From IMG/VR virus record IMGVR_UViG_3300046665_000548, positions 310,001-374,000 of that record: DNA of 64,000 nt; one strand, written 5' to 3'. Each line of letters begins with the position of its first letter. The first letter of the stretch is position 1. Of the stretch, positions 1,273-36,956 are shown piece after piece. The notes beneath the pieces are model-generated. The model was given only the letters and a program-made list of their open reading frames with translations, was not told the origin of the DNA and ran no database searches. The position numbers and the translations under genes are program-made.

Positions 1273-4200
1273 TTAGGATGTCACTGCGATCAAATGCGGC
1301 GACGGGAACACCATTACCGTGTTGTCACGATTTTCCATATTCAGCATGTTGACGTAGTAATCACCCTGCGGAATGCTGATGTTTAGCGGCCCTTCCTGGA
1401 CCTGCATGGTGTCCGGATATACGAACACGGTCATTTCTGGCTGTGGCCGCCATGCGCGATCCTGAATGGGTGTTCCTAGCGGAAGCTTGCTCAGCCATAT
1501 GCGCAGAGAACCATCTTGATAGGTCTGGCCGAACTTTGGCTTCATACGAAGGATACGCAGCTTTACTGGATCGTCCGTCACCTGGAGGATGAAGCACACC
1601 GCCTGACCGGCCGGGATGTCGTACTGGTTCTTGAGCAGGACCGACTGGCCAACTGGCGTAGCCATATGGAACGGATAGCTCGGTGCCTTTACGGTTGCTG
1701 AAACCTTACCGACAATGCGCGGAGCAAAATCAAGGATGATGTTCGACGCCGTTCCATGGATGTATGGACCGGCGAAGCCATCGCTGGTGAATGGCGCGAG
1801 AAGCTGCTCAACAGTGCTGGTGATGCCAACGCTACCAAACGCATCAATCGTGGCGTGGAGTGTGTTCTGGCCACGTGCACGGATCGGTGCGGGAGAGATC
1901 GCGATAGAGGTGAACGGACCAAACGTCGTAGCCTGTGCGCGGCCCTTAACGATAAGATCGAGGTTGGTGTTCTGAGATGCGCCACCGATTGTGCTCTGAC
2001 CGGAACCAGAGACCGAGGTATGTGGGATCGCAAACGAACCAAACTCGGGAACAGTGCTATTCGCGGTGCCTTCGACGGTAGCCTTGGTCCGGCCGACCGA
2101 CGTGACAGGCAAGATTGCGGCGATACTGGTGACGGAGACCAGCGCGCTGCCGGATGCGTTCTGAACAACCGGACCGATCTTCGCAACACTGAATGCACCG
2201 GCTTTGCGTTCGAGCGTACCCGCACTGGTGAACGGCGCAATCGTATTTGCGCCAGATAGCCGAGCAGCACTGTTAGCGGACGCAAATGACGTGACTGCAA
2301 GGGTCGATGAGCCGGTTGCCGTGGCAACCGCATCGGCAATAACCGTGGTATTGAAGTATCCACTGTTTTGTTCGGCAGAGCCAGCAATGACGGCTTTAAC
2401 GGAACCACTCGACAGGGTTGCCGGGATCGTATCGGACGCAGTACCGCGCAGGATACCGGAGACATCCGTTGTGCTCGTAAACGGCCCAACGCGTGAGGTG
2501 TCGTACGCAACAATCCTTGCCTTGGCAGCGCCAGACGAGGATATAGTCGGAAGTATCTGGTTTGCACTGCCGCCGTTGGCCCCGGTAGCTTGTGCAGCCG
2601 ACGTAACCGGACCAATCGTATTATTGGCAGAACCATCTGCGGTAACGCGGGCGATGGATTCGGAGGCAAATGGCGCGACCGTATTTGCACCCGATGCGCT
2701 GGCCCGGACGTAGGTTGTCGAGATAAACGGCGCAATGGTGATTGCACCGGAAGCACTGACTAGATCGACAGAGAGCCCCGCAGAGGCGAATTCGGCAAAT
2801 GCGGTGGCCGATGTCGCCCTAACTTGGACAGCGCCTTCTGTGACGCTCTGTAGGGCTCCGATGGACACTGTAGCGGTGCCGCTGGCGACCAACCCCAGAA
2901 GACCGGTGGAAGTAAATGCACCAACCGTATTGGTGGCTGCCGCTTTCGCGATACTCGACAGATTGCCATTGCTTGAATAGGCAGAGATCGTGGATGCCGA
3001 AGCACCAATGATCGGCGGGTAACCGCCAACAGCGATTTCCGTGAACGCCGAAATGGTCTGGCTGGCCGTACCACTGATGGATTCAAATATCGGAAGCCCG
3101 TGACCATCGGACAACACCGGCTGCACGGTCTGGGCAACATTAACCGAGACCCTGGCAAATCCTTCCGCAACGGATGTGATGGCGTTGATCGAATGTGTGA
3201 CCGAACCACCGATGACGTTACCAATGGTGGTAAAGCTTTCAAACAAACCGATTGAATTGGTTGCCGCAGCAGCCTTAACCAGAAGCTTGAATTGACCACC
3301 ATTGGTGAACGGCGTAATCGTCTGGGAAACATTAGCGGCATTTCCGCTGACGGAACCACGGCCTTGTGACGCGACGATAACGAAGCTTTGCGAAACCGTA
3401 CTATGGATTGGCGTCGTACCGCTTGCGACGTTTGTGAACGGATCGATTTGAAGCGCAGGAGCAACATCGACGCTCTGATCGATACGGACAGTTTGCGTGA
3501 ATGGAGCGATGTTATTCGCGGCCGAACCAACAATGACAATTTGAGCGCTAGCAACGGTCGCGAACGGATCAATGTTTTCGCTTACTATTGCGTTGACTAG
3601 ACCTGACGAGGTAGCGCTATTGACAAACGGTTCAATCTGGTTCGCAGTCGAACCAAGGTTTTGAACCACACCAAGCGTGACGTTCGAGAATGGCGCGATT
3701 TGCGTGCTAGCAGAAACCGTACCAATAGTCTGACCAGCCGCGACCAGAGCTTCTTGTGGAATGCTTTGATCCGCATACGCCCCAACGATGGCACGAGATG
3801 TGGATGTGCCGGTAATTGGCTCGATCAGTACGCTGAGAGAACCAACATCCAGCGCCTGAACGTTTGTACTCTGGGTGAATACGAACGAGGATGCCGCGCT
3901 GCCTAGAATTCCTACCTTGGCGGCGGACGCGGTGGTGAATTCATCAACGACAGATGTGCCACTCGCGTTACGCGTATTGAAGAGGTAGCCGTTCGAGATG
4001 AACTCGCCCAGGTTCGATGTGCCAATACCGTGGATGTTTTCAACAGTGCCCTCGGCATCAATCGAAAACAGACCAATCGAATTAGTACCAGACGCATTGT
4101 TCGTAACCTTGGCCGCACCATTCGACGCGATGTCAAACGTGGCAGTCGAAGTACCGGTGACGGTTTCCACAGCGACCGCAGCCGAGATAACCGGGCTGAT

Positions 4201-5493
4201 CGTGGATGGCCCAAATAGGCTCGCGAGTGCCTTTGCCGAAGCAGTCTGGGTCGCATTGGTGAAGGTTGACGTGCCGCTTAGAGACGCGAGGCCATTAACA
4301 ACACCAACGGACGTGACGGGAGCAATGGTCGATGCGCCTGCGGCGAGATCAGGAACCACTCCGATACCATTACTGGTAACGGAACCGATATTCTGCGCAG
4401 CCGTAACTGTGACGATTTCACTCGAAGTCGCGGCCGAGATGAACGGCGGAACGATTGAGTTGCCGCTGAGCAAATAGACCTGGATTGCATTCGCATCGGA
4501 GGAGAAGTCGCCAATTGTCTGTTCGGCCGAAGCGAAAGCTTTTGTTCGCGAAGTGAAATTGTCGATAGTAGCATCGACTGTCGCATGGATCGGAACGATA
4601 CCAACAGCACCAAGAGCGTATTCCTCGCTCTCGATAACCTCACCATCTTCGTCAAGTAGAAGCTCATCAAATTCGCCCGTTAGCGAATTATTGCGGTTTA
4701 CGAATGGAGCTATCGTCTGGTCAATTGACACAAACAAATCATAGAAAGCGTTCGTACCGACTATTCCAGTAAACCCGACTACTGTCTGATCGGCCTGCGC
4801 TACAATGAGAGTAGCGACGTTGCCTGAAGCAACAACCGCATCGATTGACTGAGCCGCAACACCACCAACGTTCGTTTTAGAACTCGCGGACTGCACGTAG
4901 GCGTCCATCGTCTGGGCCGCTGTAACGGTTACGCTGACGCTGTTAATAGCCGAACTGACTATTGGGTCCAGGGTTTGAGCCACAGTCGTCTTGACGACAG
5001 TCAAACTGTTTGCCGAGCCGACAATCGGGGCCAGGGTTTGGATCGCGAAGCCAGCAACGGTGTTCAAACCAATCGACGTTCCACCAAAGGGGTCAACGAT
5101 CTGATTGGCGTTGGCTTTTGCCGAAATGCTACTACTTGACGTGCTAACAAACTGATCAACCGCCTGGGTAGCGCTCGACTTGATCGAGTTCGCAAGGATT
5201 GCCGTCTGCCCGAATGCGCCAATTGCTTGAGTAGCAATAGCCGTTGTGGTGGCAGTAGCGCTGGCGGTCTCACTGAATGATGCTGGAGTATTGCTTGCCG
5301 TGACCGTAACACGTGCTGAAGAGCTACCGGAACTGCCGAACGCCGCAATATTCTGGCTCGCCGTCTCCGTGACGATGGCCGCAGCCGTACCCGACGTTTG
5401 GACAAGACCAATCGTATTAGCAGCCGTTCCCGCTACATCCGTAGAGGGGAAGCTTGCAAACGGCGCTGAGCCTAAAGATCGGTTACCTAACAC
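1273..5493 (-). CDS. Giant Ser/Thr/Ala-rich 21-aa-repeat fibre/scaffold protein (1406 aa)
   Basis: Phe recurs every 21 aa; globular C-terminal domain shared with 7077..10652 and 14261..22702; late TAAATA upstream (5525-5530, minus). Confidence 0.8.
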   Translation of the reverse strand: MLGNRSLGSAPFASFPSTDVAGTAANTIGLVQTSGTAAAIVTETASQNIAAFGSSGSSSARVTVTASNTPASFSETASATATTTAIATQAIGAFGQTAILANSIKSSATQAVDQFVSTSSSSISAKANANQIVDPFGGTSIGLNTVAGFAIQTLAPIVGSANSLTVVKTTVAQTLDPIVSSAINSVSVTVTAAQTMDAYVQSASSKTNVGGVAAQSIDAVVASGNVATLIVAQADQTVVGFTGIVGTNAFYDLFVSIDQTIAPFVNRNNSLTGEFDELLLDEDGEVIESEEYALGAVGIVPIHATVDATIDNFTSRTKAFASAEQTIGDFSSDANAIQVYLLSGNSIVPPFISAATSSEIVTVTAAQNIGSVTSNGIGVVPDLAAGASTIAPVTSVGVVNGLASLSGTSTFTNATQTASAKALASLFGPSTISPVISAAVAVETVTGTSTATFDIASNGAAKVTNNASGTNSIGLFSIDAEGTVENIHGIGTSNLGEFISNGYLFNTRNASGTSVVDEFTTASAAKVGILGSAASSFVFTQSTNVQALDVGSLSVLIEPITGTSTSRAIVGAYADQSIPQEALVAAGQTIGTVSASTQIAPFSNVTLGVVQNLGSTANQIEPFVNSATSSGLVNAIVSENIDPFATVASAQIVIVGSAANNIAPFTQTVRIDQSVDVAPALQIDPFTNVASGTTPIHSTVSQSFVIVASQGRGSVSGNAANVSQTITPFTNGGQFKLLVKAAAATNSIGLFESFTTIGNVIGGSVTHSINAITSVAEGFARVSVNVAQTVQPVLSDGHGLPIFESISGTASQTISAFTEIAVGGYPPIIGASASTISAYSSNGNLSSIAKAAATNTVGAFTSTGLLGLVASGTATVSIGALQSVTEGAVQVRATSATAFAEFASAGLSVDLVSASGAITIAPFISTTYVRASASGANTVAPFASESIARVTADGSANNTIGPVTSAAQATGANGGSANQILPTISSSGAAKARIVAYDTSRVGPFTSTTDVSGILRGTASDTIPATLSSGSVKAVIAGSAEQNSGYFNTTVIADAVATATGSSTLAVTSFASANSAARLSGANTIAPFTSAGTLERKAGAFSVAKIGPVVQNASGSALVSVTSIAAILPVTSVGRTKATVEGTANSTVPEFGSFAIPHTSVSGSGQSTIGGASQNTNLDLIVKGRAQATTFGPFTSIAISPAPIRARGQNTLHATIDAFGSVGITSTVEQLLAPFTSDGFAGPYIHGTASNIILDFAPRIVGKVSATVKAPSYPFHMATPVGQSVLLKNQYDIPAGQAVCFILQVTDDPVKLRILRMKPKFGQTYQDGSLRIWLSKLPLGTPIQDRAWRPQPEMTVFVYPDTMQVQEGPLNISIPQGDYYVNMLNMENRDNTVMVFPSPHLIAVTS

Positions 5494-31697: not shown

Positions 31698-32897
31698 ATG
31701 CGTGATTTCATCGACGGCGTTGCTTTGAGCAAAGCTTTTCAAGGTATTCTATTCCATGGTTCTCCCAACCATAAGCTGATCATTGACCACGAGAACGGCT
31801 CGCTATTCACGACGTTCGATGATGCGTGCAACTATGGTCCGAACGTCTTTGAATGCCGTGTAAACCTGCGCCGCCCATACACGCTGACCTCAGCCGATAA
31901 TCCACATGACCTAATGAATAGCCTTGGAAACGAAGGCTACGACGGTTGTATTATGGACCAGGATGGCGTTCGGAAGATTATCGTATTCGACGCCAAGTCG
32001 ATCACGTTCATTAAGCATCATGACGCCGCGTGTGATCTCGATGAAATGGACATTGAACAGAACGTTATCCTGAAAGAGTTTCGTCCAGGAGCCGGACAAC
32101 ACGTCTTGATGATCACCGGCAAGCTCGCCAAAGCCGGACTTGATCGCGTCATGAAGGCCCTAGGTACGGAAGACTTCACTTATGAAATCCGAAACCTAGA
32201 TATTGCAGTTGCAGCCTGGATCACGACGGACCTGATCAAAAATTCAATCGAAGACCTGGAAGGGGTCGATCTGATCCTGATTCCAGGCAAAGCCACGGGC
32301 GACGAAGAGCAGCTTGCGAAAGACCTTGGGGTAAAGGTCATGCGCGGTCCGGTCTGCTACAGCGAGCTTCCTGTGTTCTTCGAACACCACGGTGTTGAGA
32401 TCGATCCTGAAGGCATCATCCGGCCCAAGATCATCGTTCTGGGTGATGAGGCTGAGTACGCCGAAGCACTGAGCAAAACATACGAAGTACCGCACCTCAC
32501 GATTCACGAGATGCTAGACAGCCTCGGGAAGGAAGATGATCTTGTTCTGAAGATCAGCGAATTCATCTCGGATGGTGCGCCCGTCCCGCATTACCTGATG
32601 GCAGAACTCGTACGCAGTCGCCTTGTCATGCAGGATGTTCAGAAAGGCTACGTGCTGGACGGCTATCCCCACACGCCGCGTGACGCTATCTGGATGGATG
32701 ACATTAAACCGCAGCCGGACGTGATTGTTTCAATGGGATCGGCAGACCCTGAGGTGGTTGAGCACTATACGGGGAACCCGGCGCTCGTAGAGGTCGATTC
32801 ATCGGACCCAGAACGCACAATGTCGCTCCTCTACACGGGCGTCGAGATGTTGATGAGACAGTGCGTAAAGCCGGGAATGGCTAATACGAAAAAATAG
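31698..32897 (+). CDS. Fusion: ART-like domain + DUF6513-like domain + degenerate adenylate-kinase-like domain
   Basis: FHGS...YGPNVFECRVNLRRP...GYDG; ITGKLA..GL.RV...VAA.IT...LIPG...GD...LGV.V.RGP....LP.FF; GYVLDGYP with no P-loop. TAAATA 4 nt upstream. Confidence 0.65.
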   Translation: MRDFIDGVALSKAFQGILFHGSPNHKLIIDHENGSLFTTFDDACNYGPNVFECRVNLRRPYTLTSADNPHDLMNSLGNEGYDGCIMDQDGVRKIIVFDAKSITFIKHHDAACDLDEMDIEQNVILKEFRPGAGQHVLMITGKLAKAGLDRVMKALGTEDFTYEIRNLDIAVAAWITTDLIKNSIEDLEGVDLILIPGKATGDEEQLAKDLGVKVMRGPVCYSELPVFFEHHGVEIDPEGIIRPKIIVLGDEAEYAEALSKTYEVPHLTIHEMLDSLGKEDDLVLKISEFISDGAPVPHYLMAELVRSRLVMQDVQKGYVLDGYPHTPRDAIWMDDIKPQPDVIVSMGSADPEVVEHYTGNPALVEVDSSDPERTMSLLYTGVEMLMRQCVKPGMANTKK

Positions 32898-32918: not shown

Positions 32919-33173
32919 ATGGACATGGATCGCAAATTAGTCAGCAAAGAGCCCCACGAGATTTCTTATCTTGCGGAGAAACTAGGCGTTTCGCCAGAGA
33001 CTATTCGTCAGGCTCACAAGCAGGTAGGTCGTAGTCGCGCAAAGGTCGAGGCTTTTGTGAAGGCTCAGAAGGCAACCGCCGAAGCCGCTTTAGAAACACC
33101 ACCGACCGAACCCACCCGTGGTTTCGATCATCATTGGGTTTCTTCCCTCAACTATTCTGTTGACGTTCGCTAA
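32919..33173 (+). CDS. DUF3606-like small protein
   Basis: DR..V..EPHEI.YLA.KLGVS...I..A...VG.SR.KVE; TAAATA 5 nt upstream. Confidence 0.65.
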   Translation: MDMDRKLVSKEPHEISYLAEKLGVSPETIRQAHKQVGRSRAKVEAFVKAQKATAEAALETPPTEPTRGFDHHWVSSLNYSVDVR

Positions 33174-33182
33174 TACTGCGAG

Positions 33183-33190
33183 TATAAATA
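33183..33190 (+). promoter_or_regulatory. T4-type late promoter TATAAATA for the tRNA-Asn operon
   Basis: Perfect T4 late -10 box, 5 nt before the leader ATG. Confidence 0.75.
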
Positions 33191-33195
33191 AGATC

Positions 33196-33243
33196 ATGAT
33201 GATGAATCGCAACAATTCGAATAATATCGAGGGCCACGCATAA
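33196..33243 (+). CDS. Asn-rich attenuator leader peptide MMMNRNNSNNIEGHA
   Basis: ATG ATG ATG AAT CGC AAC AAT TCG AAT AAT ATC GAG GGC CAC GCA TAA: 5 Asn in a 7-codon stretch, upstream of two tRNA-Asn genes. Confidence 0.8.
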   Translation: MMMNRNNSNNIEGHA

Positions 33244-33297
33244 GCGGGGATTGCGATCTGTTATCAGATGCAAGCCGCCCCGCAGGGCGGCTTTTTT
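33198..33297 (+). promoter_or_regulatory. Transcription attenuator (protector 1:2, antiterminator 2:3, terminator 3:4)
   Basis: 33198-33212 pairs with 33251-33265; 33244-33260 pairs with 33265-33283; terminator AAGCCGCCC-CGCA-GGGCGGCTT plus T tail at 33272-33297. Confidence 0.75.
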
Positions 33298-33309
33298 GTT
33301 GTTAGGTGA

Positions 33310-33393
33310 TGGCCGGTGCCCGGAATGGTATCGGAGCAGATTGTTAATCTGTCGAGGGAAACCTCATTGCAGGTTCGAGTCCTGCCCGGTCAG
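33310..33393 (+). tRNA. Non-canonical tRNA with GTT (Asn) anticodon and long variable arm
   Basis: Acceptor TGGCCGG/CCGGTCA, G73; D stem CCG/CGG; anticodon arm GCAGA-TTGTTAA-TCTGT; variable arm GAGG-GAAA-CCTC; T arm GCAGG-TTCGAGT-CCTGC; followed by CCT, not CCA. Confidence 0.8.
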
Positions 33394-33418
33394 CCTGACG
33401 ATCAAAGCGTAGTAGTAT

Positions 33419-33493
33419 TCCTGGGTAGCTCAGCGGCAGAGCGTTCGACTGTTAATCGAATGGTCGCAGGTTCGATCCCTGCCCCAGGAGCCA
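33419..33493 (+). tRNA. tRNA-Asn(GTT)
   Basis: Canonical cloverleaf TCCTGGG/CCCAGGA, TTCGA-CTGTTAA-TCGAA, U1-A72, G73, encoded CCA. Confidence 0.95.
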
Positions 33494-35344: not shown

Positions 35345-35402
35345 TTTGACCCAGAATAGTCTGCTGGAATATGGTGAACCATATTTTATTTGGTTCTTTA
35401 TC

Positions 35403-36293
35403 ATGTTGTTGCAGAAGCTCAAAGAGCACGAACTTATTCATCCACCGAAATGGTTGCCGGATAACACAATTTACCTGACCATTATGGGTTCGGTCGCGTA
35501 TGGAGTCTCGTCGGATACATCCGATATGGACCTTTATGGATTCTGTATGCCGCCAAAGGAACTGGTGTTCCCGCATCTTGCTGGAGAAATCCCAGGTTTC
35601 GGCCGCCAGATTGCGCGGTTCGAGCAGTGGCAGGAGCATCACGTCAAGGCTCCAGATTCCAACCAGGAATACGATTTTTCGGTGTACTCCATCGTGAAAT
35701 ACGTCAGTCTGTGTATGGAAAATAACCCTAACATGATCGACAGCCTGTTCACGCCTCGGCGCTGCGTGATCCATTCTACGGCGATCTCGGAGATGATCCG
35801 AGAACGTCGAAAGGAATTCTTGCACAAGGGCGCATGGCACAAGTTCAAGGGCTACAGCTACGCCCAGATGCACAAGCTGCGTGGCAAGTCGAATGCATCA
35901 AATCCGAAGCGTGCAGCGTCTATCCAAGAGGTTGGGTATGATGTGAAATTCGCCTATCATGTCGTCAGGCTGCTGTCTGAGGTTGAGCAGATTCTGATCG
36001 AGGGTGACCTCGACCTGGAGCGCAACCGCGAGCAGTTGAAGGCTATTCGCCGTGGCGAATGGACCATCGATCAGCTTGAGCAACATTTTGCCGACAAGGA
36101 AGCTGTTTTGGAGAACGTTTATGCGAATAGCACGTTACGTCATTCTCCGGACGAGGCAAAGATCAAGACGCTGCTGATCGACTGTCTGGAGCAACACTAT
36201 GGAAGTCTCGATAAAGCTATCGCGAAGGATAAATCGTCAGGTCAACTGATCAGCGAGCTTGAAGCCGTACTGGATCGTTTCCGAGGTGCGTGA
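35403..36293 (+). CDS. Pol-beta superfamily nucleotidyltransferase (RlaP/YcgL-like)
   Basis: GSVAYG.S...SDMD.YG...NPNMID.LF...GYDVKFAYH..RLL...IRRGE. Confidence 0.85.
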   Translation: MLLQKLKEHELIHPPKWLPDNTIYLTIMGSVAYGVSSDTSDMDLYGFCMPPKELVFPHLAGEIPGFGRQIARFEQWQEHHVKAPDSNQEYDFSVYSIVKYVSLCMENNPNMIDSLFTPRRCVIHSTAISEMIRERRKEFLHKGAWHKFKGYSYAQMHKLRGKSNASNPKRAASIQEVGYDVKFAYHVVRLLSEVEQILIEGDLDLERNREQLKAIRRGEWTIDQLEQHFADKEAVLENVYANSTLRHSPDEAKIKTLLIDCLEQHYGSLDKAIAKDKSSGQLISELEAVLDRFRGA

Positions 36294-36485: not shown

Positions 36486-36956
36486 ATGCGATACGCGGAT
36501 ATTATCAAAGAGAGCCTAGTTCGGAAAACCGTCTATCACGGTAGCCCTACGTTTGATGGAGCCACCCAAATAAGTTTGGGTCATCCAGGTCTGTTTTATG
36601 TAACGGACGATTTGGAATACGCCAAAGATTATGCTCGAAGAGGTTACATAAGCGTCTTCTCGATGCAGATGCAGAACCCTTTAGACTTGCGTGTCGCTCA
36701 AAACATCGAAGAAGCCTACCAGATTTACTCAGCCAATCCTCCGGACGTAGATGAACCGTACAACATCGAAACCGATGCTGGCGAAGAATGGGCTCTCCTA
36801 GTTTCGGAGGATGTGGTGAATCACTTCAAGCAGAAGGGCTTCGATGGTTTCGTGATAAACGAAAGCTCTAACGGGCTATCCTATGCCATCACAAACCCTG
36901 CTCGCCAACTCAAGCTGATAAGCGTAGAGAAGTCCCAACAGATGATGCCTAAATAG
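36486..36956 (+). CDS. ART-fold (ART-PolyVal-like) protein, putative internal head protein
   Basis: VYHGS...GLFYVTDD.EYA..YA...NPLDL...KGFDG..I; leader MRYADIIKE; TAAATA 4 nt upstream. Confidence 0.65.
   Translation: MRYADIIKESLVRKTVYHGSPTFDGATQISLGHPGLFYVTDDLEYAKDYARRGYISVFSMQMQNPLDLRVAQNIEEAYQIYSANPPDVDEPYNIETDAGEEWALLVSEDVVNHFKQKGFDGFVINESSNGLSYAITNPARQLKLISVEKSQQMMPK

What the first reader, a model, noticed from the sequence alone, without database searches (positions are those of the whole stretch)
33310..33393. Class-II-shaped tRNA with Asn anticodon and mixed identity elements
Seen: GTT anticodon, U1-A72 and G73 (Asn/GatCAB-type), but also a 16-nt variable region with a GAGG-GAAA-CCTC stem, a 3-bp D stem, a tRNA-Tyr-like anticodon stem (GCAGA/TCTGT) and a G3-U70 pair. 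Established: bacterial long arms belong to Ser/Leu/Tyr/Sec tRNAs, and G3-U70 is the AlaRS determinant. Inference: either a re-assigned tRNA-Tyr body that evades tRNA-Asn-specific nucleases, or a deliberately mischarged tRNA that keeps ribosomes moving over Asn codons. The latter would explain tight attenuator control.
Basis: partly seen in the sequence, partly recalled or inferred. Interest (0 to 1): 0.75.

Follow-up and report, generated by a model that had tools for sequence, protein, structure and literature searches.

The report
Long-armed asparagine tRNA of a giant phage
A 608-kb phage carries, beside a normal asparagine tRNA, a second copy with an extra hairpin arm; such long-armed copies of Asn, Lys and Thr tRNAs are common in phages and are most likely spare tRNAs that host tRNA-cutting defences fail to recognise, and this one is switched on by a sensor of ribosomes stalling at Asn codons.

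Summary
Window 33310-33393 is a well-formed 84-nt tRNA (Rfam 46 bits, ARAGORN Asn-GTT) with U1-A72, G73, G3.U70 and a 16-nt variable arm (GAGG-GAAA-CCUC). The 3-bp D stem is doubtful; a 4-bp stem with a 3-nt connector fits better.

It is not a one-off. The same design occurs at 110 places in IMG/VR, in about 279 cultured T5-like phage records, and in related 240-578 kb phages, where it often sits beside a normal twin. Only about 15 examples occur in 185,579 cellular genomes.

Across the family G73 and U1-A72 are kept as in normal tRNA-Asn, and the extra stem covaries. G3.U70 is unique to this copy. Asn is the only identity set fully met, so deliberate mischarging is not supported.

In four related phages, long arms concentrate in Lys and Asn tRNAs. 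Among neighbours of the pattern hits, Thr(UGU) is also enriched. These are the published targets of the PARIS nuclease AriB.

The upstream Asn-rich leader and terminator form one of seven matched leader-peptide attenuators in front of tRNA operons in this genome. It is therefore a general supply-on-demand switch, not a lock on a dangerous tRNA.

Best reading (about 0.5): an Asn-charged, defence-resistant spare tRNA. Charging, expression and nuclease resistance are untested.

The parts
33160..33189 (+). Promoter-like element TTGACG-17 nt-TATAAAT, ending 6 nt before the leader ATG, so the transcript is probably leaderless or nearly so
   Evidence: Read directly. The tool's consensus scan did not list it because the last base of the -10 hexamer is A. 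The strict cassette TTGAC[AG]-N17-19-[AT]TAAAT-N5-7-ATG occurs only 3 times in the 608-kb genome, each time before a leader ORF upstream of tRNA genes. My own estimate of the chance expectation is about 0.04.
33196..33243 (+). Leader ORF MMMNRNNSNNIEGHA*, with 5 Asn codons (AAT x4, AAC x1) among 15 codons
   Evidence: There is a weak resemblance to Rfam Phe_leader (23.5 bits, below the gathering score).
33234..33248 (+). Hairpin pairing the last leader codons (region 1, 33234-33239) with GCGGG (region 2, 33244-33248); it would sequester region 2 when the leader is not being translated there
   Evidence: RNAfold of nested segments.
33244..33283 (+). Predicted antiterminator: GCGGGG (33244-33249) pairs with CCCCGC (33278-33283) and encloses a small hairpin; -21.1 kcal/mol before the 3' arm of the terminator is made
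33272..33299 (+). Intrinsic terminator: 9-bp stem with 7 G-C pairs, 4-nt loop, then a T run
33310..33395 (+). Long-armed tRNA-Asn(GUU). Acceptor 33310-16/33386-92, anticodon 33343-45, extra arm 33353-33368, G73 at 33393, CC at 33394-95.
33419..33493 (+). Ordinary tRNA-Asn(GUU) twin (U1-A72, G73, encoded CCA, 5-nt variable loop, same T stem GCAGG/CCTGC), 23 nt downstream
   Evidence: (70 bits).

Best explanation
This is a working asparagine tRNA of a giant phage, not a wreck and not a disguised Tyr, Ser or Ala tRNA. It keeps the complete bacterial Asn identity set: G34-U35-U36 and G73, plus U1-A72 for the amidotransferase route. It is therefore most likely charged with Asn by the host enzyme, since the phage encodes no AsnRS or GatB. 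It carries an added hairpin arm between positions 45 and 46. It belongs to a widespread viral class of 'shape-shifted' twins of class-I tRNAs, mainly Lys, Asn and Thr(UGU). The extra arm most likely lets the phage copy escape host tRNA-cleaving defence nucleases that dock on the anticodon stem and core of the normal-shaped tRNA. AriB-like Toprim nucleases and other anticodon or variable-loop nucleases are examples. The gene is co-transcribed with a normal twin from a promoter, leader-peptide and terminator cassette. When Asn-tRNA is plentiful, the ribosome reaches the leader's stop codon, covers region 2, and the terminator forms. When Asn-tRNA is depleted or cut, the ribosome stalls on the last Asn codons and masks region 1. 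Region 2 then pairs with the terminator's 5' arm, and transcription runs on into the two tRNA genes. Shown: the structure, the identity elements, family membership and covariation, the enrichment in viruses and in Lys and Asn, and the seven matched cassettes. Inferred: charging with Asn, expression and processing, nuclease resistance, and the working of the attenuator.
For: The tRNA is intact. The family is large. There are 62 distinct long-armed tRNA-Asn genes from the first scan; the extra helix covaries in 3 of 3 consensus pairs, for example gcccGAAAgggc against gtccGAAAggac. The Asn-only pattern gives 110 IMG/VR loci, against 15 real cases among 82 hits in 596 Gb of cellular genomes. Identity elements are kept: G73 in 55 of 62 and U1-A72 in 42 of 62 long-armed genes, against 45 of 46 and 30 of 46 normal viral tRNA-Asn genes. 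Asn identity is defined as anticodon plus G73, with U1-A72 for GatCAB (PMC9976931). Twins occur elsewhere: related phage G002 has the same long-then-normal Asn doublet, plus Lys(UUU), Lys(CUU) and Gln(UUG) long/normal pairs and a long Thr(UGU) flanked by normal Thr(CGU) genes. In G001 the long and normal Lys(CUU) share an identical acceptor stem, T arm and U73. Enrichment: in four related phages, long arms occur in 10 of 21 Lys and Asn genes against 5 of 140 other class-I genes (Fisher 3e-7). Among neighbours of the pattern hits, Thr(UGU) is 10 of 58 against 0 of 24 for other Thr anticodons. AriB of PARIS cleaves Lys(UUU), Thr(UGU) and Asn(GUU) at positions 40/41, also contacts the D loop, and is countered by phage T5 versions of exactly these three tRNAs (PMC12409363). 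There is a precedent for arm length mattering: the longer variable loop of phage SP15 tRNA-Tyr is needed to defeat Retron-Eco7, which cuts in that loop (PMC12673091). Function in cultured phages is plausible: an 83-nt long-armed tRNA-Asn is conserved in about 279 T5-like records, whereas T5 itself has a normal shape with changed bases at 39-41. Attenuator. Seven cassettes in this genome have leader runs that match the downstream tRNAs (N; T/V/I; L/Q; F/L/W/R/K; D/E; S; H), each with a strong terminator.
Against: There is no expression, processing or charging evidence: no public run holds the locus. No nuclease assay exists for any long-armed tRNA. This tRNA keeps the UAAUC motif next to AriB's cut site, so any escape would have to be steric. 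The PARIS paper notes that the T5 relative Bas34 is not protected by its own tRNA-Asn; I did not establish whether that gene is the long-armed type. G3.U70 with G2-C71 could allow some charging by AlaRS. G73, G2-C71, C11-G24, G30-C40 and a long arm are part of the bacterial Ser set, and the phage encodes its own SerRS. From my own knowledge, class II synthetases face the variable-loop side of the tRNA, so an extra arm might hinder AsnRS. Long arms also occur in Cys, Trp, Ile(UAU) and Gln tRNAs, which are not known AriB targets. The four-genome count is not phylogenetically independent. The host is unknown.
Confidence: 0.5

Rival explanations
1. It is an ordinary, redundant tRNA-Asn whose extra hairpin is a tolerated, selectively neutral insertion. 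Phage tRNAs are under relaxed constraint. The gene simply adds Asn decoding capacity, and the arm has no role in defence.
For: The Asn identity set is intact. The long-armed Asn genes look polyphyletic: some have class-I D arms and others class-II-like D arms, as repeated insertions would give. Stems are short (2-4 bp) with GAAA loops. Oddities are frequent in phage tRNAs, for example G3.U70 in about 1% of non-Ala tRNAs and many short-armed tRNA-Leu genes.
Against: The stem is maintained by compensatory changes. The long-armed Lys lineage is kept across four phages of 45-59% GC. There is strong concentration in Lys, Asn and Thr(UGU) rather than a random spread. The long-armed gene is typically retained beside a normal twin. 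The 83-nt form is conserved at 95-100% identity in about 279 T5-like records.
Confidence: 0.2
2. It is a mischarged tRNA. G3.U70 recruits AlaRS, or the long arm with G73 recruits host or phage SerRS, so Ala or Ser goes in at AAU/AAC codons. This would either keep ribosomes moving when Asn-tRNA is lost or remodel the proteome.
For: G3.U70 and G2-C71 are present. G3.U70 is in 50 of 51 tRNA-Ala genes but only 15 of about 1270 other tRNAs in the set. Adding G3.U70 to tRNA-Tyr gives dual Ala/Tyr charging in vitro (PMC9976931). G73, G2-C71, C11-G24, G30-C40 and a large variable region are bacterial Ser elements. The phage encodes SerRS and an AlaRS N-terminal fragment. Long-armed allo-tRNAs with G73/U73 and odd anticodons were proposed to accept Ser, and amber-suppressor variants inserted Ala and Ser in E. 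coli (PMC5389517).
Against: G3.U70 is in 1 of 62 long-armed Asn genes, and the closest relatives have G3-C70, so a single C-to-U change explains it. The Ala elements A73, G4-C69 and G20 are absent. G1-C72, which is absolutely conserved in bacterial tRNA-Ser, and R4-Y69 are absent. The arm is Tyr-like (4 bp, 3 unpaired 3' bases), unlike the phage's own tRNA-Ser arms (6 bp, 1 unpaired base). Most family members have C2-G71. The attenuator is generic to seven operons of ordinary tRNAs.
Confidence: 0.12
3. The extra arm is a handle for a phage-encoded partner, such as a synthetase, a modification or repair enzyme, or a CCA-adding enzyme. That would make a semi-private phage translation channel rather than a shield against nucleases.
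For: The phage encodes AspRS, SerRS, TyrRS, TrpRS and a ThrRS-like protein. Bacterial TyrRS and SerRS are known to bind long arms, and the arm geometry is Tyr-like. An RlaP-family nucleotidyltransferase (RNA-repair-associated) lies 2 kb downstream. This tRNA lacks an encoded CCA.
Against: No AsnRS, LysRS or GatB is encoded. T5-like phages and the 147-kb Erwinia phage carry long-armed tRNAs; T5-like phages, from my own knowledge, encode no synthetases, and I did not check either group. No recurrent neighbouring protein was identified, and none was systematically sought.
Confidence: 0.1
4. It does not act in translation. It is a decoy that binds and occupies a tRNA-directed nuclease, or another tRNA-like regulatory RNA.
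For: The PARIS authors raise competition or inhibition by over-expressed viral tRNAs as a possibility. The tRNA keeps the UAAUC recognition motif.
Against: Every element needed for charging, EF-Tu binding and decoding is kept (7/5 acceptor/T arms, T loop, U33, A37). Negative feedback through an Asn-codon leader makes sense only if the products relieve stalling at Asn codons.
Confidence: 0.08

Closest known systems
[quoted passage not shown]
   Same: These are phage-encoded isoacceptors of the same three specificities that carry long arms here. They serve as nuclease-resistant replacements for host tRNAs cut at positions 40/41.
   Different: The T5 tRNAs keep the normal shape and escape through base changes at 39-41 and in the D loop; T5 tRNA-Asn has a 5-nt variable loop. 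The present tRNA keeps UAAUC and adds an arm. Resistance is demonstrated for T5 and untested here.
Phage SP15/T5 tRNA-Tyr against Retron-Eco7 (PtuAB); PMC12673091, PMC11555353
   Same: The length of the variable arm of a phage tRNA decides escape from a defence nuclease.
   Different: That case is a tRNA that is class II anyway, with a loop 5 nt longer, and the nuclease cuts in the variable loop. Here an arm is added to a class-I isoacceptor.
The 83-nt tRNA-Asn of T5-like phages (for example Salmonella phage Shivani, Escherichia phages slur09 and IrisVonRoten) and the 86-87-nt tRNA-Asn, tRNA-Lys and tRNA-Trp of Erwinia phage pEp_SNUABM_01, annotated in GenBank simply as tRNAs
   Same: The design is the same: Asn anticodon, G73, a hairpin with a GAAA loop, and 3 unpaired bases before the T stem.
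   Different: They are different lineages (G1-C72, 3-bp arm) with no G3.U70. No leader-peptide cassette was seen upstream of the long-armed Asn genes in the other fetched loci. I found no paper discussing their shape.
nev-tRNAs of nematodes (PMC3333845) and allo-tRNAs of bacteria and phages (PMC5389517)
   Same: [quoted passage not shown]
   Different: Those carry the identity of a class-II amino acid (Leu or Ser) and so would miscode. Allo-tRNAs also have 8/4 or 9/3 acceptor/T arms. This tRNA is 7/5 and keeps the identity set matching its anticodon.
Leader-peptide transcription attenuators (trp, his, thr, ilv, leu, pheA; pheST)
   Same: All have a short ORF with a run of regulatory codons, mutually exclusive hairpins and an intrinsic terminator. 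The T/V/I leader resembles thr/ilv leaders.
   Different: The known examples control amino-acid biosynthesis or a synthetase. Here the regulated genes are the tRNAs that read the leader's own codons, in a phage, at seven loci. I found no description of this.

Membership tests
tRNA (Rfam RF00005) | Cloverleaf with conserved core nucleotides, scoring above the family's gathering threshold | tested here: met
   46.1 bits against a threshold of 29, full-length match. ARAGORN call. U8, A14, G18G19, A21, U33 and the GTTCGA T-loop are present.
Bacterial tRNA-Asn | Anticodon G34-U35-U36 and discriminator G73 (AsnRS determinants) | tested here: met
   GTT at 33343-45 and G at 33393. Determinants as listed in PMC9976931.
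Bacterial tRNA-Asn | U1-A72 (determinant for GatCAB amidation, typical of bacterial tRNA-Asn) | tested here: met
   T at 33310 pairs with A at 33392. The same pair is in 42 of 62 long-armed and 30 of 46 normal viral tRNA-Asn genes.
Bacterial tRNA-Asn | Actually aminoacylated with Asn and used at AAU/AAC codons | not testable with these tools
   No run holds the locus. This needs charging assays.
Class II (type 2) tRNA | Variable region longer than 10 nt that forms a stem-loop | tested here: met
   16 nt with a 4-bp stem and GAAA loop. The helix covaries in the family.
Class II (type 2) tRNA | 3-bp D stem with a large D loop, as in bacterial Ser, Leu and Tyr tRNAs | tested here: inconclusive
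   ARAGORN draws 2 pairs, a mismatch and G.U. Infernal and RNAfold draw a 4-bp stem, a 7-nt loop and a 3-nt connector.
Bacterial tRNA-Tyr | A73, with G34 and U35 (and an anticodon reading UAY) | tested here: not met
   G73 and U36 here. Viral tRNA-Tyr genes have A73 in 42 of 43 and G1-C72 in 37 of 43. Only G34, U35 and the arm geometry match.
Bacterial tRNA-Ser | G73, G1-C72, G2-C71, R4-Y69, C11-G24, G30-C40 and a large variable arm in the Ser orientation | tested here: not met
   G73, G2-C71, C11-G24 and G30-C40 are present. U1-A72 and C4-G69 do not fit. The arm is 4 bp with 3 unpaired 3' bases, against 6 bp and 1 base in the phage's own tRNA-Ser genes.
tRNA-Ala | G3.U70 with A73, G2-C71, G4-C69 and G20 | tested here: not met
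   G3.U70 and G2-C71 are present. G73, C4-G69 and U20 do not fit. Whether AlaRS nevertheless charges it is not testable here.
allo-tRNA | 8/4 or 9/3 acceptor/T-stem arrangement with a long arm | tested here: not met
   7-bp acceptor stem and 5-bp T stem.
Leader-peptide transcription attenuator | Short ORF with a run of codons for the controlled amino acid, directly upstream of an intrinsic terminator | tested here: met
   5 Asn among 15 codons, and a terminator 33272-33299. Six further matched cassettes occur in the genome.
Leader-peptide transcription attenuator | Mutually exclusive antiterminator, placed so that a ribosome stalled at the run favours it | tested here: met
   Predicted pairings are 33234-39 with 33244-48, 33244-49 with 33278-83, and the terminator. 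These are predictions only; read-through in vivo is not testable here.
Defence-evading phage tRNA | Resists a host tRNA nuclease that cuts the host isoacceptor, and rescues infection | not testable with these tools
   Only circumstantial: the overlap of specificities with AriB targets and the enrichment in viruses.

The most novel reading that the evidence does not exclude
Giant phages run a codon-by-codon surveillance circuit. Leaderless mini-ORFs made of the codons read by the downstream tRNAs detect ribosome stalling when a host defence nuclease, or starvation, removes those tRNAs. Antitermination then switches on replacement tRNAs. These include shape-shifted versions, namely class-I tRNAs given a long arm and tRNA-Leu stripped of its arm, that shape-reading nucleases cannot bind. 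The long-armed tRNA-Asn would be one output of a general sense-and-replace counter-defence system.
Probability: 0.3. Interest if true: 0.9.

Novelty: new variant of a known kind. Interest (0 to 1): 0.74.

Why it matters
Phage tRNAs have only recently been recognised as counter-measures to tRNA-cutting immune systems, and the known escapes work through base changes around the cut site. If adding a whole arm is a second, structural route of escape, three things follow. First, it would explain a large and so far undiscussed class of oddly shaped tRNAs in phage genomes, including hundreds of cultured T5-like phages. Second, it would show that AsnRS, LysRS and the ribosome tolerate a class-II shape. 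Third, it would offer ready-made nuclease-proof or orthogonal tRNA scaffolds. The coupling to leader-peptide attenuators would be the first case I know of in which tRNA genes are regulated by ribosome stalling on their own codons. That is directly testable in E. coli with reporters and with PARIS or PrrC strains.

Tried and rejected
- **Orthologue search in cultured phages.** blastn of the locus against 50,697 phage records matched only the normal twin. The odd tRNA alone matched just the arm and T arm of an Erwinia phage tRNA-Trp.
- **Relatives through the flanking protein.** The 399-aa DUF6513/adenylate-kinase protein gave none. Relatives were then reached through the phage AspRS.
- **Expression.** No public run holds more than 2-3 of 43 sampled words, probably the conserved twin.
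- **Private Asn-charging route.** AspRS is present, but there is no AsnRS or GatB, and the only amidase is generic and below the GatA cut-off.
- **Decaying tRNA-Tyr.** Rejected, because the core is intact, the identity ends are of Asn type and the family covaries.
- **G3.U70 as a family trait.** Rejected: 1 of 62.
- **Asn-rich leaders upstream of other long-armed tRNA-Asn genes.** None was convincing.
- **Cellular hits to the search pattern.** Most (67 of 82) are not tRNAs; those inspected were truncated tRNA-Asn 3' halves or repeats.
- **Literature.** Ten searches found no description of long-armed class-I tRNAs in phages or of attenuator-controlled tRNA genes. The library does not hold most subscription journals, so absence is not proof. 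Himeno 1990 could not be fetched.
- **Not done.** No complex prediction was run, because jobs with RNA receive no verdict.
Full report
**Context.** The window is bases 310001-374000 of a single 607,744-bp virus record with 51.7% GC, which CheckV rates as complete. ARAGORN finds 57 tRNA genes and a tmRNA in it. The record also encodes AspRS, SerRS, TyrRS, TrpRS, a ThrRS-like protein, and fragments resembling GlyRS and AlaRS. It encodes no AsnRS and no GatB. It is therefore a giant phage with a large translation kit.

**The observation.** ARAGORN and Rfam both call a tRNA at 33310-33393/5, the latter at 46.1 bits against a gathering score of 29. The sequence shows the following:
- U1-A72, G2-C71 and G3.U70 in the acceptor stem.
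- G73 followed by CC and then T, so there is no encoded CCA.
- Anticodon GTT in the loop UUGUUAA.
- Anticodon stem GCAGA/UCUGU.
- A 16-nt variable region, C-GAGG-GAAA-CCUC-AUU.
- A normal 5-bp T arm.

The conserved tertiary nucleotides are all present, including an A15-U48 pair. The one doubtful item is the '3-bp D stem'. Infernal and RNAfold prefer a 4-bp CCGG/UCGG stem with a class-I-sized 7-nt loop and an extra base in the 8-9 connector. That extra base recurs in relatives. Twenty-three bases downstream lies a wholly ordinary tRNA-Asn(GUU), scoring 70 bits, with the same T stem.

**It is a member of a large viral family.** The Asn-only version finds 110 loci.

ARAGORN on the loci of the first scan gives 62 distinct tRNA-Asn genes with variable regions of 9-21 nt. 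The same pattern in one genome of each of 185,579 prokaryote species (596 Gb) gives 82 hits. Only 15 of these are real long-armed tRNA-Asn genes. The ones I inspected among the rest were truncated tRNA-Asn 3' halves and repeats.

The closest relative is in a 15.6-kb viral contig (L048). An 83-nt version is present at 95-100% identity in about 279 cultured T5-like Salmonella and Escherichia phage records, and in Serratia phage CBH8. GenBank annotates it simply as tRNA-Asn. Erwinia phage pEp_SNUABM_01 has tRNA-Asn, tRNA-Lys and tRNA-Trp genes of 86-87 nt. T5 itself has a normal-shaped tRNA-Asn.

**The extra arm is a selected helix.** RNAalifold on 34 members recovers a five-helix cloverleaf. All three consensus pairs of the extra helix show changes on both sides. 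Over the whole structure, the observed covariation score is 0.73 against 0.20 for shuffles. Near-identical genes differ by compensatory pairs, for example gcccGAAAgggc against gtccGAAAggac.

The arm typically has a 2-4-bp stem, a GAAA loop (29 of 61) and 3-4 unpaired bases before the T stem. In the same data tRNA-Tyr has that geometry. By contrast, tRNA-Ser has 4-7-bp stems and one unpaired base, and tRNA-Leu has two unpaired bases. Inserting a hairpin between positions 45 and 46 of a class-I tRNA would give the same picture. The family contains both class-I-type and class-II-type D arms, so it probably arose more than once.

**Which amino acid?** I used the identity sets listed in Giege and Eriani 2023 (PMC9976931).
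- **Asn** (anticodon, G73, and U1-A72 for GatCAB): fully met.
- **Tyr**: fails at A73 and at position 36.
- **Ser**: has G73, G2-C71, C11-G24 and G30-C40. It fails at G1-C72, which is absolutely conserved in bacterial tRNA-Ser, at R4-Y69, and in arm geometry.
- **Ala**: has G3.U70 and G2-C71. It lacks A73, G4-C69 and G20.

Across the family, G73 (55 of 62) and U1-A72 (42 of 62) are kept as in normal viral tRNA-Asn (45 of 46 and 30 of 46). G3.U70 occurs only in this gene. Its 'UGG' subfamily otherwise has G3-C70.

G3.U70 is in 50 of 51 tRNA-Ala genes and in about 1% of other tRNAs in the set. It is therefore unusual and could allow some misacylation, but it is not a design feature of the class.

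In related phage G001, the long and normal tRNA-Lys(CUU) have identical acceptor stems, T arms and discriminators. This argues that the twins share one synthetase.

**Why an extra arm?** Three further giant phages were reached through the phage AspRS and read in full. Together with this genome they give a sample not selected by my search pattern.
- Long arms occur in 7 of 14 Lys genes and 3 of 7 Asn genes.
- They occur in only 5 of 140 other class-I genes: Thr(UGU), Cys twice, Gln(UUG) and a CUA suppressor (Fisher 3e-7, though the genomes are related).
- The long-armed gene usually sits next to a normal gene with the same anticodon.
- Among neighbours of the pattern hits, Thr(UGU) is long-armed in 10 of 58 genes, against 0 of 24 for other Thr anticodons.

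Lys(UUU), Thr(UGU) and Asn(GUU) are exactly the tRNAs cut by AriB of the PARIS system. AriB cuts between positions 40 and 41 and also contacts the D loop. Phage T5 defeats it with its own versions of these three tRNAs (PMC12409363).

A longer variable loop in a phage tRNA-Tyr is already known to be required for escape from Retron-Eco7 (PMC12673091). Within T5-like phages there are thus two designs. T5 has a normal shape with changed bases at 39-41. Many relatives keep the UAAUC-C motif that the PARIS paper reports for E. coli tRNA-Asn and add an arm instead.

I therefore take 'shape change as escape from tRNA-directed nucleases' as the most likely role of the arm. This is inference, and no assay exists. 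The published remark that the tRNA-Asn of Bas34 does not protect against PARIS may bear on it. I did not establish whether that gene is long-armed.

**The attenuator.** Upstream lie four elements:
- TTGACG-17-TATAAAT (33160-33189).
- A leader ORF MMMNRNNSNNIEGHA* (33196-33243), starting 6 nt after the promoter-like element.
- Alternative pairings (33234-39 with 33244-48, and 33244-49 with 33278-83).
- A strong terminator (33272-33299).

The geometry fits classical attenuation. A ribosome stalled on the last Asn codons masks region 1 and frees region 2 to form the antiterminator. A ribosome that reaches the stop codon masks region 2, and the terminator forms.

The strict cassette occurs three times in the genome, and a relaxed version occurs seven times upstream of tRNA genes. 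In every case the leader's run matches the tRNAs behind it, and a terminator of -14.6 to -24.6 kcal/mol intervenes:

| Leader run | Downstream tRNAs |
|---|---|
| N | Asn, Asn |
| VTTTVVIITTV | Ile(GAU), Thr(CGU, UGU, GGU), Val(GAC) |
| LLQQLQL (CUN and CAR codons) | Leu(GAG, CAG, UAG), Gln(CUG, UUG) |
| LFNKRFWRRVR | Phe, Leu(CAA), Trp, Arg, Arg, Lys, and the long-armed Lys(UUU) |
| DEREED | Asp, Glu x3 |
| SQSSSSSSAS | Ser x4 |
| SHQHSHH | His |

Related phages have Thr-rich and Arg-rich leaders before Thr and Arg tRNAs. The control is therefore a general supply-on-demand device for tRNA operons. It is not a safety lock on an odd tRNA. It implies only that the products relieve stalling at Asn codons.

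**Comparison and novelty.** The nearest known things are listed here.
- The T5 anti-PARIS tRNAs: same specificities and presumed role, different means.
- The SP15 tRNA-Tyr variable loop.
- nev-tRNAs and allo-tRNAs, which have long arms with non-Ser/Leu anticodons but carry a mismatched identity, so they miscode.
- Classical leader-peptide attenuators, which have the same logic but different regulated genes.

Ten literature searches found no paper describing long-armed versions of class-I tRNAs in phages, or attenuator-controlled tRNA genes. The genes themselves are annotated in GenBank, in one record with a 2004-era accession (AJ604531). I rate the tRNA as a new variant of a known kind.

**Limits.** There is no expression, processing, charging or nuclease data, and no public run holds the locus. 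The host is unknown. The enrichment counts come from related genomes and from pattern-selected loci.

Noticed in passing
G000:C1 (outside the window): leaders starting at 136675(+), 149104(+), 238115(-), 253282(-), 259639(-), 523723(+); inside the window: 33196(+): There are seven promoter, leader-peptide and terminator cassettes in front of tRNA operons. Each leader's codon run matches the downstream tRNAs: F/L/W/R/K, T/V/I, His, L/Q, Ser, D/E and Asn. This looks like a genome-wide system of stall-sensing attenuators for tRNA genes. I found no description of such a system.
   Followed up: partly
G002 (IMGVR_UViG_3300046660_000488) 42172(+) and 262203(-); G003 64921(-); L010, L062, L075, L090: Related giant phages have comparable leaders. 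MNRMTTRTTTTIA precedes a Thr(CGU), long-armed Thr(UGU), Thr(CGU) cluster. ...VLRRRR and MKTRSNRLRRI precede Arg tRNAs. Lys/Arg-rich leaders of the type MKTVM.YKRKKRK lie upstream of tRNA-Lys in four contigs.
   Followed up: partly
G000:C1:137536-137622 (+): A long-armed tRNA-Lys(UUU) of 87 nt, with C73 and a Tyr-like D arm, is the phage's only UUU isoacceptor and sits next to a normal tRNA-Lys(CUU). Orthologous long-armed Lys(UUU) and Lys(CUU) genes, each beside a normal twin, occur in all three related giant phages, most with U73.
   Followed up: partly
G000:C1:219040-219116 (-); G002 509849-509926 and 510355-510432: The reverse swap also occurs: tRNA-Leu genes with a short 5-nt variable loop (class-I shape) beside normal long-armed tRNA-Leu genes. 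By ARAGORN's parse, about half of the tRNA-Leu genes in the sampled viral loci are short-armed.
   Followed up: no
G000:C1:1944-2020, 4091-4178, 4180-4256: There is a tRNA with a 4-base anticodon (GGAA) and two CUA (amber-reading) tRNAs, one of them long-armed with A73. These hint at frameshift or stop-codon suppression. I did not examine whether the genome shows recoding and assume no alternative code.
   Followed up: no
window 35346-36293 (+), 36486-36956 (+), 31698-32897 (+): Downstream of the tRNAs lie an RlaP-family nucleotidyltransferase (RNA-repair-associated, E 6e-18) and an ART-PolyVal ADP-ribosyltransferase domain (weak, below the Pfam cut-off). Upstream lies a DUF6513 plus adenylate-kinase-like protein.
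   Followed up: no
G000:C1:230688-230764 (-): tRNA-Pro(GGG) of the same phage also has G3.U70, together with A73. It is a second candidate for misacylation by AlaRS.
   Followed up: no
G000:C1:29017-29880 (+), 590844-591602 (-), 592053-593519 (-), 575092-576372 (+), 576377-576796 (+): These loci hold truncated synthetase-like ORFs (an AlaRS N-terminal 287 aa, a GlyRS-like 252 aa, a ThrRS-like 488 aa lacking the N-terminal part), a generic amidase, and directly after it a tmRNA with the tag ANDNVAVSEYALAA.
   Followed up: no
L125, L150, L163 and multi-copy hits in Denitrificimonas, Thiopseudomonas and Pseudomonas genomes (for example L126, L135): In cellular genomes the search pattern mostly hits 3' halves of tRNA-Asn that carry an inserted palindrome next to intact tRNA-Asn genes, and a repeated element bearing GTGTTAATCCGT...GGTTCAACTCC. 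These are possibly att-site duplications or tRNA-derived repeats.
   Followed up: no
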